Shown piece after piece: positions 2,586 to 38,849 of a stretch of 39,021 nt of DNA. A program made the position numbers and the translations under genes. Source of the stretch: Octopus bimaculoides (taxonomy: Eukaryota); contig NC_068995.1 of NCBI RefSeq assembly GCF_001194135.2, positions 34,256,196-34,295,216 of the forward strand. The letters are read 5' to 3'. Within the stretch, counting starts at the first letter, position 1, and each line of letters begins with the position of its first letter. Below the pieces are notes generated by a model. It ran no database searches, was not told the DNA's origin, and saw nothing but the letters and a program-made list of their open reading frames with translations.

Positions 2586-3652
2586 CAGTAGCGACCATGT
2601 ATTGAAATAGTTATAAAAGATTAACAACATATTGAGACTATAGATATTTTACACATACTTAGATATATCTAATATCTAGCTCTCGTGAAAATTTCAAGTG
2701 AATGGAATAAATATTTCGTAAGTTATGAGGAAATAAACAAGCAATCTTCCAAATTACAGCGGCCAAAAGTTAAGGGTCACTTAGAAAAAACGAACTACTA
2801 ACCGAGGTATTTTTTGTTTAGAAGACTGTTAATGGGCTAACAGTTACTTCTTATGATCTTACATTATTGGAACATTCAACTGTCAACATGGTGGCTTGTG
2901 AGAGACGACCGGTGTCCTGTGATGAAAAACAAAGGATTGGGTACCTTCACCAAGAGGGTAAGTCAAATTCTGTTAGCAACTACTGTAGGAAGGTCTAGAA
3001 GTGTTGTACAACGAATAGTAACTCGTTTTAAGTCACCAGGATGGACATATGCTAAATCTAAAAAAAAAACGGTAGAGCCCCTGAAACTACACCAAGACAG
3101 GATCGTATTATGGTTAGAATGTCACTGAAGGATAGGTTTAAGAGTGCTTCTGAGATATCCCGCGAGTTTAGCCCCACTTCCGATGTCAACGTATCGCGCA
3201 AAAACAGTTTCTCGGAGGTTACGAGGTTCTGAGTTGCTTCCTCGGACACCGGCAAAGAAATCTCTGATCTCCAAGAAGAATCAAAGAGCCCGTCTTCGTT
3301 TCGCTCACGAACATGTCATTTGGACGGAAGAACAGTGGTCGCTGGTTCACTTTAATGATGAATTGAAGTTTAATGTCATTGATTCCGAGAGCGGGATCTA
3401 CGTCCGACGAAGTGGTGAAAGGTTATCTCGTGCATGTGTGAAAAAAAAACAAAAAACAGTGAAATATGGAGGAGGCAGTGTAATGGTATGGGGAGGGATC
3501 TCTGCTGCTGGTCCTGGTTCACTTATTCGCCTACAAGGGACTGTCAATGCTGAGATCTACAAACATATTCTTAGACAGCATAACCCTTCCACATCACCGA
3601 TCGTCGTCAATTCAACCACCTATCTTCGTTCAGGACAACGTTCCCTGTCACA
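2586..3652 (+). mobile_element. Tc1-family DNA transposon remnant with frameshifted transposase, 3' truncated
   Basis: Begins TA|CAGT at 2584-2589. Translated pieces include TVSRRL, KKSLISKKNQRARLRFAHEH, WTEEQW..VHFNDELKFN (first catalytic Asp, FSDESKFN-like), KTVKYGGGSVMVWG and IFVQDNVPCHT (second Asp, QDNAPCH-like). Ends in (TA)n and an N-gap before the catalytic Glu. Confidence 0.92.
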
Positions 3653-3658
3653 CATATG

Positions 3659-3697
<39 letters not shown>

Positions 3698-10740: not shown

Positions 10741-11531
10741 ATTGATGGAAGCTTGAGAACTTGAATCATAATGAATTTTTCATCAACCGAATCTTTCAGT
10801 TAATGAATAATTCATTAGCTGATCACACAACCAAGGATACCACCCCCTATGGATGCATTGTAGTTACTCTTTTGATAGAGCTTGGTGATACTGACCTATT
10901 GATCTTCTAGGATTCTTTCGTTCAATATCACTCTCAGAAGCACTGTTGACTCAATTGAGCTCTTCTGCTTCCTCTTCACAACCCACCATGCTGCAGTCCT
11001 ATGAATTTGCCATATCCCTGACAGGGTGGCTGAACGGGCGCTATGCTTTACGAAAGGGCATCCTTAACTATGCAGGGCAAGGCAGTCATTCTGTGAGGTA
11101 TTTTGAAAGTACCAACTTTCAAACACATTTATCGTATGTACAACCGTATCGGTAAATAATTCAATTCGTAAACTACAACCAATTCTTAAATACGTAACTA
11201 AACATCAGCCAACCCATTAAGTCATACAAAAATTATAATCCATGTCGTCTTCCATAGTATAATATAAAAGTGAAAGCTGAATGATCACATTCATTCAATC
11301 AATCAATTTACAGGCAGGATTAAACGCTAACTTTAATAAACTACAACAAAGAAACATATAAACCAATGCACATTGTATCAGTATTAATAGTAAACTGCAA
11401 TAAGTAAATTAAATGCTAAATCGCGACCAATCTTTAAGTCCATACAAATAATAATCCCACCAGTCTTCCATCGTTACTACTATAATAAAAGTTAAAGCTT
11501 TATATAAATCTCTCCATATATATATATATAT

Positions 11532-12445
11532 ATGAAACAGGGACAGCTCACGAAGGGGTAGACTCTTTATGTTGCATGTCTCGTTTCTCTGTTTCTTTTT
11601 CGTTGTTCGAAAAATAGTTCGTTTTCTATGTTTTCGTTTCTCATTGTGTTTAACGTTTTTTTTATGTCCTGTACCCATTTATGCACGTATGTATACATAT
11701 AGATGTAGGTATGTACATATATGTATGGATATGTGCATATATTAATATACTATTTATATCATTATATGATCGAACGCCACGTATCCTTTTCCAAGTGAGT
11801 TTTATCTTAATAATTACGATGCACACTCTTCTACTATCTCTTCTCTGTCTATCTCTCTCCCTCTCTCCCTCTCTTGTTCTTCATCCTTTATGTTTTTCGC
11901 TTCCACTCTTTCCCTATTCTTCTCTCCGTGCCTTTTCCTGTCTCCTCATGTCTCGTCTACCTAGCGTTCATAATAATGTTCCTATGGTCTTGGCTCAACA
12001 GCCCTCACCGTTTGTTTTTACTGTCTTGTTCTCACTGTCCTGTTCTTGTTAACACTTACACCCTCCACAAAAAGTCAAAAATTTTATTTAATTTGCTTTG
12101 CGGGAAGGACTGTTTCAACGAAGTCGCGTATTGTCCTTGCCTTCGAAACGCGGAGTAGATGGAACAGGGACAACTGACGAAGGGGTGTACTCTTGATGTT
12201 GCATGTCTCGTTTCTCTGTTTCTTTCTTTCGTTGTTCGAAAAAAAGTTCGTTTTCTATGTTTTCGTTTTATGTTTTCGTTTCTCATTGTGTTTAACGGGT
12301 TTTTTTTATGTCCTGTACCCATATATGCATGTATGTATACATATATATGTAGGTATGTACATATATGTATGGATATATGCATATATTTATATATTATTTA
12401 TATTTTTATATAATCGAACGCCACGCATCTTTTTCGAAGTAAGTA
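11532..12445 (+). mobile_element. Non-coding partial tandem repeat (about 1.4 units of ~630 bp), pLTR/retrozyme-like, inserted in (TA)n
   Basis: 11532-11800 is a diverged direct repeat of 12159-12444 (offset 627 at the start). TA repeats on both flanks; contains a hammerhead core; no ORF. Confidence 0.75.
12124..12185 (+). ncRNA. Putative hammerhead ribozyme with non-circularly permuted strand order
   Basis: Stem III UCGCGU 12124-12129 / ACGCGG 12148-12153; cleavage triplet GUA (A12130); stem I UUGUCC 12131-12136 / GGACAA 12168-12173; GAA 12145-12147; CUGACGA 12174-12180; extra A 12181; stem II CUUC 12141-12144 / GGGG 12182-12185. Confidence 0.7.
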
Positions 12446-16776: not shown

Positions 16777-17523
16777 CGCTGCTATAATCGGTTTTGCAAC
16801 GGCTTTTCTTTTTTCTTTTCCGAAGAGCCATAAGAAGAGAAACGCTAGACATACAACTAGCACACTCCGGCCCCTCTCTGAGAGGACACCTCGCAAAGAA
16901 ACGAACAAGGGACAACAATCAATGCACACTAAAAAATTGTCCCATCTGTGACACAGATTTATGCCAACGAGTATAGAATACAATGTAACAAATGCAACAA
17001 GTTCTATGTGGGTAGCACAACAAGACCGTTACATGTCCACATCAAAGGACATCTGAACACGAGAGCCTCCTCCTTCAGAAAACATCTAAATACATGCTGG
17101 AGCACCGACAAAAGCATAACAGTCACAATTGAGGCCAATGAGAGAAATTTGGGTAATTTAAGAATTAAGGAAGCTATGCTCAAACACAGACTAGGACCCC
17201 AAATTAACAACAGGCTGGAGGTTGGTAATCAATATATTATTTAGCTACATCTGGATCCGTATAGGTTCCTTTTTGATATGCTCATCTATTGTTTATAACA
17301 AAAAAAAAAAGAGAGAAGAGGAAAAAAAGGGAAAACAAAAAAGGAAGCTGCAAGTATAATACATAACTTAGAAGCAGCGCTACAGATGTACCAACACACA
17401 CGAGATTGAAACATAGCCGACCTCACGCACTTCTCATGAGGAATTCCGGAAGGAGCTTCGTGAGATCACCGCTGAGACACTTCCGAAAAAAGAAAAGCCG
17501 TTGGAAAACCGATTATAGCAGCA

Positions 17524-17577
17524 ACTCCATCTAAGAATATCTGAAGAAGGAATTGTATTCCGAAATATCATCGGAGT
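17524..17577 (+). ncRNA. Minimal type I hammerhead motif in the 3' pLTR
   Basis: CUGAAGA 17541-17547, extra A, perfect stem II GGAAU/AUUCC, GAAA 17562-17565, palindromic AUAU stem III, AUC cleavage triplet. Stem I has only 2 proximal bp plus distal ACUCC/GGAGU. Confidence 0.62.
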
Positions 17578-17702
17578 ATGGATAACTAAATTACAACAGG
17601 TATATAGTCCATTTTTTGTATTATGGTGCATTGTTGTACCATTGAAAACGTTTTATTCTTTACAAGCAATACACAATGCTTCAAGCGAACTACAATACTC
17701 TC

Positions 17703-25017: not shown

Positions 25018-25206
25018 CTATATATAAATAATAAATGAGTATATGCATATATACGTACATGTATGTACATACTTACATCTACCTGTATATATAGATGCAT
25101 ATCTGGGTACAGGACATTGCAAACAATACGTAGACAAAGTGATAAACAGAGTACAGAAAACACACAGGCCACATAGAGAACATTTCCTTCATCAGCTGCC
25201 ACCATT
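25018..25206 (-). mobile_element. Truncated relative of the 11532-12445 pLTR-like repeat, carrying a CUGAUGA half-site
   Basis: Minus strand GGTGGCAG-CTGATGA-AGGAAATGTTCTCTATGT...TGTCCTGTACCCAGATATGCAT...GTAGATGTAAGTATGTACATAC matches blocks of 12174-12380; starts at a (GA)n tract. Confidence 0.65.
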
Positions 25207-25384
25207 ATCTCTCTCTCTATATATTTTATATATTATCATTATATACATTTAATATCTTTTAATATATNNNNNNNNNNACACACAGGCCACATAGAGAACA
25301 TTTCCTTCATCAGCTGCCACCATTCTCTCTCTCTATATATATTTTATATATTATCATTATATACATTTAATATCTTTTAATATA

Positions 25385-26950: not shown

Positions 26951-27114
26951 TATTTACATTATTTACATTATTTACATTTGACGGATATTTGTCCCCATCT
27001 TGCTTGTTGTTAACACAACGTCTTCGCTGATATACCTTCCGGCCTTCATCAGGTGTCTTGGGGAAATTTCGAACCTAGGTTCTCATTCCTAAGGTATTTT
27101 TCGATATCATCATT

Positions 27115-34756: not shown

Positions 34757-35392
34757 ATATACCAAGGCTTGTATTCTATGTTTCGAAGGCGTCAATGTTT
34801 TTCAAGGTGGACGGCCGTGACATTGTTGAGTGATAGCCAACCATATTATATTGTGTTGTGTTGACGTTGTTGCGCCCGTGCGACTGAGTACTGCTTGTGT
34901 AGTTTTCTCGTATAGAACCCAGCATGCAGGATCTCTAGTGTTTAAGTATGTGTTTCGTCTGTAAATGTGCACGGGTGGGCATGGATATGCGCGTATTCTA
35001 ACGGATTTACAGGCATGGAAACTGGTCGAAAGGGTTTCTATATATTTACATATGGACACATACTTATAGACTTGAGTTTGTTTGTTATCCCAAGTGAACC
35101 CATGAAACGAATAATCTCGTTGTAGGGTTTCTTCTCTTGCTAATAATAAAATATACAATCAACACAATTTCTCTCTCTGTCTCTCTCTGTCTCTCTCTCT
35201 CACTATCTCCCTCTCTCTCACTCTTTCTCTCTCTCTCTCTCTCTCTCTCACACACTCTCTCTCTCTCTCAACAGGACATAAACAACAGGTGTCTTTCGAC
35301 TAAGGACGAATTAAATTAAGCTGACGTGTGAAGAAGTGAAGCCTTACGGCAGGGACATAAGGGTTGACAGGCATGGGAAGCAAATACATACA

Positions 35393-35426
<34 letters not shown>

Positions 35427-36117
35427 CATACATACATATATACATACATACACACACACACAAACACATGCATACACACACACACACACACACACANNNN
35501 NNNNNNNNNNNNNNNNNNNNNNNNNNNNNNNNNNNNNNNNNNNNNNNNNNNNNNNNNNNNNNNNNNNNNNNNNNNNNNNNNNNNNNNNNNNNNNNNNNNN
35601 NNNNNNNNNNNNNNNNNNNNNNNNNNNNNNNNNNNNNNNNNNNNNNNNNNNNNNNNNNNNNNNNNNNNNNNNNNNNNNNNNNNNNNNNNNNNNNNNNNNN
35701 NNNNNNNNNNNNNNNNNNNNNNNNNNNNNNNNNNNNNNNNNNNNNNNNNNNNNNNNNNNNNNNNNNNNNNNNNNNNNNNNNNNNNNNNNNNNNNNNNNNN
35801 NNNNNNNNNNNNNNNNNNNNNNNNNNNNNNNNNNNNNNNNNNNNNNNNNNNNNNNNNNNNNNNNNNNNNNNNNNNNNNNNNNNNNNNNNNNNNNNNNNNN
35901 NNNNNNNNNNNNNNNNNNNNNNNNNNNNNNNNNNNNNNNNNNNNNNNNNNNNNNNNNNNNNNNNNNNNNNNNNNNNNNNNNNNNNNNNNNNNNNNNNNNN
36001 NNNNNNNNNNNNNNNNNNNNNNNNNNNNNNNNNNNNNNNNNNNNNNNNNATATATATACATCTAGGGGGAACAAAGGCCAGCTTCATAAGGCTCAATTTG
36101 CCCCAATTCAAACGAGT

Positions 36118-36430
36118 GCCAGATTGTTCTAGTGTAGGTCTGCACCTCTGGAGCCGGCGATCCGGGTTCACACTTGGACCGTGAGAAAAAAAGAACCCTC
36201 ACACATGGGTCGTCTAAGTACCCAGCTGGGAACGGGTACTTAGCCCTTCTCAGGGCCGCAGTACACGTCACAGCAGTGCTAGAAACCAGAGAAACCAATC
36301 CCATCTAAGGCGTACTAAAACGGACAGCAGGTGGACATCCGGGAGTGTCAGGAGTTAAGGGCCGAAACATTTGCCTAAAGGGGGTTTTTCCTCTGAGGGC
36401 CACCTGCTGATACACTCTCCCCGAGTTTCT
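36118..36430 (+). mobile_element. tRNA-derived SINE, family E, with hairpin core and hammerhead-like tail
   Basis: Head GCCAGATTGTTCTAGTG (A-box-like) and GGGTTCACACTT (B-box-like, 36164-36175); perfect 10-bp hairpin CTAAGTACCC/GGGTACTTAG at 36214-36243; permuted hammerhead at 36343-36401. Limits approximate. Confidence 0.62.
36343..36401 (+). ncRNA. Second non-circularly permuted hammerhead, core with a 2-nt deletion
   Basis: Stem III GAGUGU 36343-36348 / ACAUUU 36367-36372; GUC triplet (C36349); stem I AGGAG 36350-36354 / UUCCU 36388-36392; stem II GGCC 36360-36363 / GGCC 36398-36401; GAA 36364-36366; core reads CUGAG only. Confidence 0.58.
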
Positions 36431-38849
36431 TTCCAATTATATATTTACATACATACATGCATACATACATGCATACATACATACATACATACATGCATAC
36501 ATACATGCATACATACATATATATTGTATATATATATATATATATATACACGCTGATACATATACATATCTAATGCATACATAAATGTGTGTGTGTATAT
36601 ACGTACATACACACACACATATATATGTAAAAATATGTGCCTATATATATATATATATGTACAAATACATCTATGTGTATGTATATACACAGGCATGATT
36701 AAATAACATTAAATCTATAGCTGGCTGTCATATCCAGCTTTTTCGTCACATTGTTTTAATGATTTTTTTTTTATTTATCTATTGTGGGAACGTCATATTA
36801 GTCCGTCTCCGCCTCCATCTTTTCATTATTACAATCATTATTTGAATAACAGCAGCAGTACCACCACCAATAACAGCATCAATAGTATTGCTCATAAAGC
36901 TGCCGCCTTATCTACTATGATAGTAAGTTTGTTAAAGTAGTCGAGGTGCACACTCCCAGACTCTCTCACTCCAACACTCTCTTTTATGTCTCTATCTCAC
37001 TTATTCTCTCTTTCGCTTTGTCTTTTATATATTTCTTCTGCTCAAACAATATTTGAATTTATCAACACACATTTCCTGTAGTTATTACATCAATAAACAC
37101 GTCACTAAGACCCGGCCCTTTAACGTAATTTTAGCAAAACATAGCACTATCACGTATTCTTTCAACGAAACAAGCATAGCTGTGTATCCAATTTTCTTTC
37201 AAACTAGGGATCCTGTTAGAACAAATCTCTTTAAATCATTTCGAATAATCACGACAAAGACAGTATTGACAAAAGCAAAGAAAAGAAAGAAAATATTCTT
37301 AACCAGAAGCAACAATAACAACCACAGCAACGGTTTAAGTATTATGGACGACAAAACACTTACAACCTGTTTTACATGTAGTAAGCATTTCCACTAACAA
37401 AATAAACCTTTATGATTACCTCTCTTATCTAAAGTGGTTTATAAATTGCCCCATCAGACCTAGTTGGATAAGAAATGCTGGGAGCAAAATGGCTTGTGGT
37501 TTTGCTGGGAGGTTATTCATAATGTTGTACTTTCCAACATTGAATAGAAACGAATAAAAGAAAAAAAAAAAGATATTTAGTGTATCCGATTTGTTTGCCA
37601 GGCACTATGCACACTACTTTCAAGTTTCCACAAATAATGCAAATGTGTTCGAAATATTTAAACTTTTCTGTACGACTCTCATGGCTTCGCTGCTCACAAG
37701 TTGTCTTTACCTGTATTATACTGTACAATTTATAGTGGTGTGCAAAAAAAGGCCTCTTACGTAGTACGAAATTCTTCACATCAGTTGGGAGTTTCTGCGC
37801 TATGTAGCTTTACAGTCTGAGGCTCAAATTATGTCCATTCATAAAACAAGTTCGCTGTGTGAAGGCGAATAATTGAAAGTGTAACAATATAGCCTTTGGA
37901 ACGAAGTTCAAGTTTCCTTTTAACCATAAAATGTCAATAGAGTTTCCGTCTAGTTTATTTCCAGAGTGTAACGAGGTATGTCTGAACTTGTTTTGTTTTA
38001 TCTCTAATCCCTCACCTATTTTTTCTATGACTCAAACAGCCATTTGGCTGAGCAGTGTAAATTGTTTGGCAAAGTTAATTACTATCAATCACAGGTGTTC
38101 TACTTTCTCTTCTGCTACTGGGAAAAATTTTCAGTTTATACATTGAAGAATAACAATTATATTTTATGAATGTAAAAACTAATTACGTTATCTTTTTGTT
38201 GCATACCAGTTGCCATGCCGAATGTTATTCTATCAACCAATAACTACTAGCATAAGTTTAGCTACACATCCCCATACTGACGTCTGGTTATTTCAGCCAA
38301 TCGTCATCAAGTATTTTGTCAGGAGACAAAGGTTAGAAACATCGATGTTTGTGTGTCCAGTGTTTGCATTACATCAAATGCTGACCTAAAATGAGTCAGT
38401 ATTTGCTCAGATTATCAGATAATGAAATATTGTGGACGGCAAACCAGGGAGAAAAAAACCGATTAAAACATTCATACACTTTTTAAATGTTTGTTACATT
38501 TATCTTGTAATAGATCATAGGCCGTCACTTACTTGATTCTAGTATCAGTTTAAAATAGAACATTTGAATGGAATTATGCAGGAACAAAATTGCAAATAAA
38601 TTCGTATTATTCCATATAATACGATTGAGATGATTTTTGCAATGTAAACAGTTAAAAGCATCATCATTTCGCTGAAAACATTCCGAGTTAAAAGAGCCAA
38701 ACGGCTGATGTGTGCTCTCTATGAACCAGCAGGATTTTGGAAATTCTTGGTAAAAATGACTTATCTGACAAATAGACCATACTAATTTGACAATACTTTC
38801 AATCTCACACAAAATATTTTCCTAAAAGCAGAAATATAGTGCATTTACA

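What the first reader, a model, noticed from the sequence alone, without database searches (positions are those of the whole stretch)
12124..12185. Hammerhead ribozyme with intact core in non-circularly permuted, pseudoknotted order
Seen: all conserved hammerhead nucleotides (CUGACGA, GAA, A15.1-U16.1, GUA triplet) and all three stems can form. The linear order, however, is III5'-GUA-Ia-(4 nt)-IIb-GAAA-III3'-(14 nt)-Ib-CUGACGA-IIa, which is not type I, II or III. The CUGANGA strand lies downstream and pairs into both halves of the stem III loop. Established: stems I and II lie side by side in the hammerhead fold, so a short Ia-IIb link is sterically plausible. An extra A after A9 is tolerated, and rearranged hammerheads have been reported, so this should be compared with those models. 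Standard type I-III searches would miss it. Caveats: stem II has two G-U pairs, and a competing 6-bp helix (CCUUCG 12140-12145 / CGAAGG 12178-12183) could sequester the core.
Basis: partly seen in the sequence, partly recalled or inferred. Interest (0 to 1): 0.9.

Follow-up and report, generated by a model that had tools for sequence, protein, structure and literature searches.

The report
Likely fortuitous permuted hammerhead-like motif
The sequence really does contain every piece of a hammerhead self-cleaving RNA in the rearranged "type SGC" order published in 2023, but one third of it belongs to a dispersed repeat whose other copies lack the rest, one essential helix is almost without stability, and no relatives were found, so it is most likely a rare coincidence, not a working ribozyme.

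Summary
At 12124-12185 (+) all hammerhead core nucleotides and three core-adjacent stems are present in the order S (III5'-GUA-Ia), G (IIb-GAAA-III3'), C (Ib-CUGACGA-IIa).

This order is already published as the type-SGC hammerhead (Eckert et al. 2023, PMC10085705). The candidate also shares three of that family's features:
- a short Ia-IIb linker;
- one extra nucleotide after A9;
- a possible fourth helix (GAGUA 12153-57 / UACUC 12188-92), though its 5' strand lies 10 nt from Ib.

By my estimate chance gives such a match in only about 1e-5 to 1e-7 of windows.

Four results argue against a functional ribozyme:
- The C block lies inside a ~290-bp repeat. Its two other copies in the window have unrelated 5' flanks, and one reads CUCA.
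- Stem II has 0.0 kcal/mol, against -4.8 to -8.6 in published members. A register-shifted helix of -7.0 kcal/mol sequesters G8, A9 and G12.
- The nested MFE (-20.9 kcal/mol, z = 0.03) contains none of stems II, III or the bridge helix.
- Rfam gives no hit, and a model built from published type-SGC sequences scores 7.2 bits (E about 3).

No homologues could be retrieved. Best reading: a fortuitous motif at a repeat/flank junction. I put a selected ribozyme at about 0.08 and detectable in vitro cleavage at about 0.2.

The parts
12124..12129 (+). Stem III 5' strand (U)CGCGU, ending in G16.2 and U16.1
   Evidence: Pairs with 12148-12152(53); 5 Watson-Crick pairs plus an optional U-G wobble
12130..12130 (+). 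H17 = A; predicted cleavage is 3' of this base (GUA triplet 12128-30)
   Evidence: Read from the sequence; position assigned by analogy with the hammerhead core
12131..12136 (+). Stem I 5' strand (Ia) UUGUCC; pairing can extend through 12139
   Evidence: 6 Watson-Crick pairs with 12168-73, or 9 bp with 12165-73; duplex -6.4 kcal/mol
12137..12140 (+). 4-nt linker UUGC joining the distal ends of stems I and II
   Evidence: the published type-SGC linker is typically 3 nt
12141..12144 (+). Stem II 3' strand (IIb) CUUC, with C11.1 = C12144
   Evidence: Pairs with GGGG 12182-85 as G-C, G-U, G-U, G-C; duplex energy 0.0 kcal/mol
12145..12148 (+). G12 A13 A14 A15.1 (GAAA)
12148..12152 (+). Stem III 3' strand ACGCG
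   Evidence: duplex -5.8 kcal/mol
12153..12157 (+). GAGUA, possible 5' strand of the helix that bridges stems I and II in type-SGC ribozymes. It lies 0 nt after stem III but 10 nt before Ib.
   Evidence: 5 Watson-Crick pairs with UACUC 12188-92, -3.4 kcal/mol. In published members this strand abuts Ib.
12168..12173 (+). Stem I 3' strand (Ib) GGACAA; lies inside repeat copy B
12174..12181 (+). C3 U4 G5 A6 C7 G8 A9 (CUGACGA) plus the extra A12181; inside repeat copy B
   Evidence: The paralogues read CTCACGA (copy A) and CTGATGA (copy C).
12182..12185 (+). Stem II 5' strand (IIa) GGGG
12188..12192 (+). UACUC, possible 3' strand of the bridging helix, 2 nt after IIa
   Evidence: Inside the repeat and apparently ancestral there.
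12178..12183 (+). CGAAGG, the 3' arm of the competing helix with CCUUCG 12140-45. It sequesters N7, G8, A9, G10.1, C11.1 and G12.
   Evidence: 6 Watson-Crick pairs, -7.0 kcal/mol
12158..12444 (+). Repeat copy B (about 290 bp). It supplies the C block and everything downstream.
   Evidence: 87% identical to 11529-11800
11529..11800 (+). Repeat copy A. Its 5' flank is (TA)n, its C-block equivalent is GGACAG-CTCACGA-AGGGG, and it has no S or G block.
25022..25215 (-). Repeat copy C. Its 5' flank is (GA)n and AT-rich sequence, its C-block equivalent is GGCAG-CTGATGA-AGGAA, and it has no S or G block. Part of it is duplicated across the N gap at 25268-77.

Best explanation
This is a fortuitous hammerhead-like arrangement in the published type-SGC order. 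It sits at the junction between a dispersed ~290-bp repeat, which supplies Ib-CUGACGA-IIa, and unrelated unique flanking DNA, which supplies III5'-GUA-Ia and IIb-GAAA-III3'.

The paper pairing is real, but nothing indicates that it is maintained by selection. If the region is transcribed, the RNA should mostly adopt other folds:
- a long hairpin built on an extended stem I that also pairs C3-N7;
- or the CCUUCG/CGAAGG helix that pairs G8, A9 and G12.

Self-cleavage 3' of A12130 would then be absent or very slow.

Shown here: the motif, the repeat boundary, the state of the paralogues, the predicted energies and the lack of database relatives. Inferred: that the motif has no function and little or no catalytic activity.
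For: 1. Repeat boundary. Homology between copy B (12156-12444) and copy A (11529-11800, 87% identity), and with copy C (about 25022-25215, minus strand), starts about 10 nt upstream of Ib. Upstream of that point the three copies are unrelated: (TA)n, (GA)n with AT-rich sequence, and unique sequence.

2. Paralogues. Copy A reads CUCA where G5 is essential. Neither copy A nor copy C gives a hammerhead in any block order.

3. The interval that holds S and G. The stretch 11801-12157 resembles no flank of any copy and does not resemble the repeat's 3' end (12% of shuffles score as well).

4. Stem II. Its duplex energy is 0.0 kcal/mol, against -4.8 to -8.6 (median -7.5) in 21 published type-SGC sequences. 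The same bases form a -7.0 kcal/mol helix in another register. An upstream GGGAAGGAC/GUCCUUGCC helix of -11.5 kcal/mol competes for Ia.

5. Overall fold. The nested MFE of 12115-12200 is -20.9 kcal/mol with z = 0.03, and it contains none of stems II, III or the bridge helix. Published members usually fold into their native stem III and bridge helix.

6. Database models. Rfam gives no hit at gathering thresholds in the whole window, and no hammerhead family up to E = 10 locally. A covariance model built from 14 published type-SGC sequences scores the site 7.2 bits, E about 2.9, ranking sixth in the window.

7. Relatives elsewhere. None were found in the metagenome, prokaryotic-genome or viral collections. 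The 52 loci that share the G- and C-block strings all fail the descriptor.
Against: The coincidence is rare. I estimate 1.1e-5 per window for a relaxed descriptor, and about 3e-7 once total stem energy is required to match. No Markov-generated window out of 300 gave any hit with stems of at least 5, 4 and 4 bp.

Stems I and III are both G+C-containing and perfect.

There is one extra nucleotide after A9, as in all 21 published sequences my descriptor recovered. There is a 5-bp helix between the base immediately after stem III and the bases 2 nt after IIa.

A lone descriptor match without covariation, GCS-1, did cleave weakly in vitro in the 2023 paper. Only three repeat copies could be examined.
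Confidence: 0.75

Rival explanations
1. This is a genuine, biologically used type-SGC hammerhead ribozyme in a eukaryotic nuclear genome. Stem III forms first as a hairpin. The downstream C block then pairs into both halves of its loop, the GAGUA/UACUC helix and the 4-nt linker hold stems I and II side by side, and the RNA cleaves 3' of A12130.
For: - All core nucleotides and three core-adjacent stems are present.
- The site passes the same descriptor that recovers 21 of 26 published type-SGC sequences, including the extra nucleotide after A9.
- Stem I + linker + stem II sum to 6+4+4, close to the published 5+3+5.
- A possible fourth helix exists.
- Chance expectation is very low.
- A12173 at position 2.1 is derived in copy B relative to the G in copies A and C. 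It turns a U-G pair into U-A.
Against: - The C block belongs to a repeat whose other copies lack S and G, and one has lost G5.
- Stem II has 0.0 kcal/mol, and a -7.0 kcal/mol alternative register sequesters the core.
- The MFE lacks the native helices and has z = 0.03.
- The 5' strand of the bridge helix is 10 nt from Ib, not 0-2 nt as in published members.
- The covariance-model score is not significant.
- There are no homologues and no covariation.
- The published family comes from IMG/M metatranscriptome and metagenome contigs, not eukaryotic chromosomes.
Confidence: 0.08
2. This is an accidental but catalytically competent ribozyme. The junction was created by chance and has no selected role, but a minor fraction of transcripts reaches the active fold and cleaves slowly in vitro.
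For: The hammerhead core is small and evolves readily. GCS-1, a single sequence without covariation, gave partial cleavage. The core is intact, and stems I and III are strong (-6.4 and -5.8 kcal/mol). The topology ties stem II's strands close together.
Against: Stem II is not predicted to be stable, and the competing folds are at least 5 kcal/mol better before any pseudoknot penalty is added. In the published SGC-3, disrupting any of the four helices abolished cleavage.
Confidence: 0.15
3. This is a junction ribozyme of a tandem or rolling-circle (retrozyme-like) element. The 627 bp from the start of copy A to the start of copy B would be one unit, with S and G at its 3' end and C at the 5' end of the next unit.
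For: Copies A and B lie in the same orientation 627 bp apart. Animal hammerhead-bearing repeats are often tandem (abstract of bioRxiv 10.64898/2026.07.22.740005, listed).
Against: - The stretch 11801-12157 has no similarity to the sequence after copy B, after copy C, or before copies A and C.
- The S/G region is not significantly similar to the repeat's 3' end.
- Copy A has no S or G block upstream and a dead core.
- Rfam finds no ribozyme in the window.
Confidence: 0.02

Closest known systems
Type-SGC hammerhead ribozymes (HRIMA-1 motif and type-SGC variants; Eckert, Friedrich, Weinberg & Weinberg, NAR 2023, PMC10085705)
   Same: - The same block order, S-G-C, with two pseudoknots.
- The same conserved core.
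- Stem I of 5-6 bp joined to stem II by a 1-4 nt linker.
- One extra nucleotide between A9 and 10.1.
- Stem III followed directly by a strand that can pair with bases just 3' of IIa.
   Different: - Published stem II is 4-6 bp with almost no G-U pairs, at -4.8 to -8.6 kcal/mol. Here it has 4 bp with two G-U pairs, at 0.0 kcal/mol.
- The published bridge-helix 5' strand abuts Ib (0-2 nt). Here it is 10 nt away.
- The extra base is A, not U.
- Stem I is UUGUCC/GGACAA, not AUGUU/AACAU.
- The published examples show covariation across hundreds of sequences from IMG/M metatranscriptome and metagenome contigs, and were validated by cleavage assays. Here there is a single locus in eukaryote-like DNA, straddling a repeat boundary, with no significant covariance-model score.
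GCS-1, the lone type-GCS hammerhead candidate of Caballeronia peredens (same paper)
   Same: A single descriptor match in genomic DNA, without covariation and without a context that suggests a role. Its authors treat its biological relevance as unclear.
   Different: It has a different block order. It was tested and cleaved partially in vitro. The present candidate is untested and has a much weaker stem II.
Classical type I, II and III hammerheads of animal repeats and retroelements (Rfam Hammerhead_1, Hammerhead_3, Hammerhead_II, HH9, HH10)
   Same: The same catalytic core nucleotides, and a location among repeats in a eukaryotic genome.
   Different: The block order cannot be made type I, II or III by circular permutation. 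Rfam models do not match it. Paralogous repeat copies do not carry a complete motif.
CChMVd (+) hammerhead with an extra A between A9 and G10.1
   Same: An extra A at the same core position is tolerated in a natural hammerhead. This rests on my own knowledge of De la Pena & Flores 2001; 'CChMVd-A10' also appears in the kinetics table of the 2023 supplement.
   Different: It is a type III viroid ribozyme with a stable, loop-closed stem II.

Membership tests
Type-SGC hammerhead ribozyme | Block order S (III5'-UH-Ia), G (IIb-GAAA-III3'), C (Ib-CUGAnGA-IIa) | tested here: met
   It is the only type-SGC descriptor hit in the window.
Type-SGC hammerhead ribozyme | All invariant core nucleotides: C3 U4 G5 A6 G8 A9, G12 A13 A14, A15.1-U16.1, H17 not G, G10.1-C11.1 | tested here: met
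   CUGACGA 12174-80, GAAA 12145-48, U12129-A12148, A12130, G12182-C12144.
Type-SGC hammerhead ribozyme | Stable stems I, II and III adjacent to the core | tested here: inconclusive
   Stems I (-6.4) and III (-5.8 kcal/mol) are good. Stem II pairs on paper but has 0.0 kcal/mol, against -4.8 to -8.6 in 21 published members. It is outcompeted by a -7.0 kcal/mol alternative register.
Type-SGC hammerhead ribozyme | Short linker (typically 3 nt) from Ia to IIb, and one extra nucleotide after CUGAnGA | tested here: met
   The linker is 4 nt and the extra base is A12181. All 21 recovered published sequences have one extra nucleotide.
Type-SGC hammerhead ribozyme | [quoted passage not shown] | tested here: inconclusive
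   GAGUA 12153-57 / UACUC 12188-92 gives 5 Watson-Crick pairs at -3.4 kcal/mol, with the 3' strand 2 nt after IIa. The 5' strand is 10 nt from Ib, against 0-2 nt in published members. I estimate the chance of such a helix at about 0.1.
Type-SGC hammerhead ribozyme | Covariation or conservation of the stems across related sequences | tested here: not met
   The two paralogous repeat copies carry only the C block, and one has G5 changed to C. No relatives were found in the collections. Orthologues in related species could not be obtained.
Type-SGC hammerhead ribozyme | Detectable similarity to the published family by a sequence-plus-structure model | tested here: not met
   Model R1, built from 14 published sequences with stem III and the bridge helix, scores the site 7.2 bits with E about 2.9. 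Five other window sites score higher.
Type-SGC hammerhead ribozyme | Site-specific self-cleavage 3' of H17, abolished by mutating G5 | not testable with these tools
   Needs an in vitro transcription and cleavage assay.
Classical hammerhead types I, II and III | Three-way junction without pseudoknot, with a match to the Rfam hammerhead models | tested here: not met
   There are no Rfam hits at gathering thresholds and no hammerhead family up to E = 10 in 11900-12400. The block order is not a circular permutation.
Animal retrozyme or tandem hammerhead repeat | Tandem units that each carry a complete ribozyme | tested here: not met
   Copy A lacks S and G and has a dead core. The 11801-12157 interval is unique in the window.

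The most novel reading that the evidence does not exclude
A self-cleaving type-SGC (non-circularly permuted, doubly pseudoknotted) hammerhead exists in a eukaryotic chromosome. It would have been born de novo when a dispersed repeat carrying CUGAYGA landed next to sequence that happens to supply the cleavage-site and GAAA strands. This would be the first permuted hammerhead outside metatranscriptome or bacterial sequences, and a caught-in-the-act example of ribozyme origin by juxtaposition.
Probability: 0.08. Interest if true: 0.7.

Novelty: not a real feature. Interest (0 to 1): 0.25.

Why it matters
If the site were active, it would extend the 2023 discovery of non-circularly permuted hammerheads to eukaryotic genomes. 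It would also show how easily such ribozymes can arise from a repeat plus its flank.

As things stand, its main value is cautionary. A descriptor-perfect hammerhead in a permuted order can appear without conservation, and with a stem II that should not fold. Permuted-ribozyme scans therefore need helix-stability and paralogue or orthologue checks before a hit is called.

Tried and rejected
1. Classical hammerhead or another known RNA family. Rfam gave nothing at gathering thresholds. The only local sub-threshold hits are microsatellite-like hairpins that resemble miRNA precursor families at 12313-12394.

2. Tandem or retrozyme unit of 627 bp. There is no similarity between 11801-12157 and any flank of the three repeat copies.

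3. S/G region as a diverged copy of the repeat's 3' end. The alignment score is 18, and 12% of shuffles do as well. Many other window tiles score higher.

4. Local duplication as the origin of the stems. The direct repeat ACGAAGTCGCGTA / ACGAAGGGGTGTA and the 9-nt inverted repeats are each of a kind that I estimate occurs about once by chance in 130 nt. They explain nothing on their own.

5. Collecting more genomic copies. The repeat pattern ATGTCCTGTACCCANNTATGCA gave 0 hits in the metagenome, prokaryotic-genome and viral collections. The 108-aa ORF across the site is not on record. A Tc1/mariner protein search gave only 36-69% identical proteins, and the three loci fetched from two of them contain no copy of the repeat.

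6. Relatives of the G and C blocks. The pattern CTTCGAAACN{5,35}CTGANGAAGGGG gave 51 metagenome loci and 1 viral locus. None passes the type-SGC descriptor, and several form groups of near-identical sequences.

7. Homology to the published family by covariance model. The match is not significant. The two best window hits of that model, 27033-27084 (minus strand) and 36343-36405, are not hammerheads when read.

8. A second permuted hit, at about 17481-17622 in GCS order. Its stem III is an A-run against a T-run, and its stem I is A/U-rich with a G-U pair. I dismissed it as a low-complexity artefact.

Full report
**What is there**

On the + strand, 12124-12185 reads UCGCGUA UUGUCC UUGC CUUC GAAA CGCG GAGUAGAUGGAACAG GGACAA CUGACGA A GGGG.
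- stem III: C12125-G12152 to U12129-A12148, plus an optional U12124-G12153 wobble;
- the GUA triplet, with A12130 as H17;
- stem I: 12131-36 with 12168-73, six Watson-Crick pairs, extendable to nine;
- stem II: G12182-85 with C12141-44 (G-C, G-U, G-U, G-C);
- GAAA at 12145-48;
- CUGACGA at 12174-80, followed by an extra A12181;
- the competing helix CCUUCG 12140-45 / CGAAGG 12178-83.

The window itself looks eukaryotic. G+C is 21-39%, there are 14 N gaps, microsatellites are abundant, and a Tc1/mariner remnant is present.

**The order is a published one**

Eckert, Friedrich, Weinberg and Weinberg (NAR 2023, PMC10085705) divide the hammerhead into three blocks: S (cleavage site), G (GAAA) and C (CUGAnGA). 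They describe natural, experimentally validated ribozymes in the non-circular order S-G-C, called type SGC. The candidate has exactly this order.

Rows of their alignment read, for example, AGUAGUC^AUGUU-UA-CGCUC-GAAA-CUACU-GGAG-AACAU-CUGAUGA-U-GAGCG-A-CUCC. The family therefore has these traits:
- a 5-6 bp stem I;
- a linker of 1-4 nt;
- a 5-bp stem II;
- one extra nucleotide after A9;
- a fourth helix whose 5' strand precedes Ib and whose 3' strand follows IIa by about 1 nt. This helix is required for cleavage in SGC-3.

The descriptor I wrote recovers 21 of 26 published sequences, all with the extra nucleotide. It finds the candidate as the only hit in the window.

The candidate shares the linker (4 nt) and the extra nucleotide (A). 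The 5' strand of that helix is 10 nt from Ib, whereas in published members it abuts Ib.

**Chance**

- No relaxed descriptor hit occurred in 2 x 100 Mb of Markov sequence.
- Analytically, the relaxed descriptor is expected 1.1e-5 times per window, or about once per 3-Gb genome. Stems as good as those observed are expected 7e-8 times per window.
- About 2.7% of chance relaxed hits would reach the observed total stem energy. That gives roughly 3e-7 per window for this order and 2e-6 for all six orders.
- A very loose any-order scan gives 0.07 hits per shuffled window. The real window gives two: the candidate, and a low-complexity A-run/T-run artefact near 17481-17622.

The coincidence is therefore rare. 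Stems I and III are each in the top 3-4% of chance stems, while stem II is as weak as a third of chance stems.

**Evidence from paralogues**

The C block is not unique sequence. From about 12156-12160 onward, the region is copy B of a ~290-bp repeat. Copy A (11529-11800) is 87% identical, and copy C lies on the minus strand at about 25022-25215.

| Copy | C-block equivalent | Sequence 5' of the repeat boundary |
|---|---|---|
| B | GGACAA-CTGACGA-AGGGG | unique sequence holding S and G |
| A | GGACAG-CTCACGA-AGGGG | (TA)n |
| C | GGCAG-CTGATGA-AGGAA | (GA)n and AT-rich sequence |

Copy A has lost G5. The S and G blocks therefore lie outside the repeat, and the motif straddles a repeat/flank junction.

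I tested two ways to rescue a family-level ribozyme, and both failed:
- The 11801-12157 interval is not similar to any flank of the three copies.
- That interval is not significantly similar to the repeat's 3' end either.

More copies could not be collected. The repeat is absent from the three searchable DNA collections. The protein route reached only distant Tc1 relatives from other organisms.

**Folding**

| Helix | Duplex energy (kcal/mol) |
|---|---|
| Stem I | -6.4 |
| Stem II | 0.0 |
| Stem III | -5.8 |
| Bridge helix | -3.4 |
| CCUUCG/CGAAGG (same bases as stem II, other register) | -7.0 |
| Upstream GGGAAGGAC/GUCCUUGCC (competes for Ia) | -11.5 |

The CCUUCG/CGAAGG register pairs G8, A9 and G12.

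The nested MFE of 12115-12200 is -20.9 kcal/mol, no better than shuffles (z = 0.03). It consists of an extended stem I hairpin that also pairs C3-N7, and it contains none of stems II, III or the bridge helix.

In 21 published type-SGC sequences, stem II ranges from -4.8 to -8.6 kcal/mol. Their MFE usually consists of the native stem III and bridge helix. The active fold is thus predicted to be a minor conformer here.

**Database tests**

- Rfam 15 gives no hit at gathering thresholds in the whole window, and no hammerhead family up to E = 10 around the site.
- A covariance model built from 14 published type-SGC sequences scores 12124-12197 at 7.2 bits, E about 2.9, ranking sixth in the window.
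- A pattern made of the candidate's G and C blocks found 52 metagenome or viral loci. None has an S block with matching stems.
- In the held literature, type SGC is mentioned only in the 2023 paper. All its examples come from IMG/M sequences, except one bacterial type-GCS sequence.

**Verdict**

The order is a known one, however, and the functional claim is not supported.

The most likely explanation (about 0.75) is a fortuitous type-SGC-like motif created where a repeat abuts unrelated DNA, with little or no activity. Slow accidental cleavage in vitro remains possible. Summed over all readings I put detectable cleavage at about 0.2, and the purely accidental case at about 0.15. A selected ribozyme has about 0.08.

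The weighing behind these numbers is my own inference. The low chance rate and the shared secondary traits count in favour. The repeat boundary, the dead paralogue, the null stem II, the competing folds and the absence of any homologue count against.

The decisive tests are a cleavage assay with a G12176A control and a genome-wide census of the repeat's 5' flanks.

Noticed in passing
window 11529-11800 (+), 12156-12444 (+), about 25022-25215 (-): An unclassified ~290-bp dispersed repeat is present in three copies. Each has a conserved 5' part (…CAGGGACARCTSAYGAAGG…GTTGCATGTCTCG…), an invariant ATGTCCTGTACCCA, and then a TA/CA-rich microsatellite-like stretch. Two copies abut (TA)n or (GA)n at the 5' boundary. 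The pattern was not found in the metagenome, prokaryotic-genome or viral collections.
   Followed up: partly
window 17481-17622 (+): A second hammerhead-like hit, in GCS order: CUUCC-GAAA at 17480-88, CUGAAGA-A-GGAA at 17541-52, and UU at 17616-17. Its stem III is AAAA/UUUU and its stem I is A/U-rich with a G-U pair, and the blocks are spread over about 140 nt. I judged it a low-complexity artefact.
   Followed up: partly
window 2599-3697 (+): A Tc1/mariner transposase remnant runs into an N gap. Related proteins carry HTH_Tnp_Tc3_2 and DDE_3 domains. The DNA is about 75% identical to Logan contigs from SRR11869390 and SRR11869391, so a related element exists in another sequenced organism.
   Followed up: partly
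window 25216-25330: The same ~60-bp sequence (…aatggtggcagctgatgaaggaaatgttctctatgtggcctgtgtg) occurs on both sides of the 10-N gap at 25268-77. This looks like an assembly duplication at a scaffold gap.
   Followed up: no
window 12313-12394 and similar stretches (for example 11677-11742, 35384-35452, 36436-36524): TA/CA-rich imperfect palindromic microsatellite stretches give sub-threshold Rfam matches to mir-297, mir-466 and mir-3149 (49 bits against a gathering score of 90). These are almost certainly composition artefacts.
   Followed up: no
window 27033-27084 (-): The best window hit of the type-SGC covariance model (10.6 bits, E about 0.4) contains GGUUCGAAA and CUGAUGAAGGCC next to an (ATG)n run. 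It has no cleavage-site strand, so it is not a hammerhead.
   Followed up: yes
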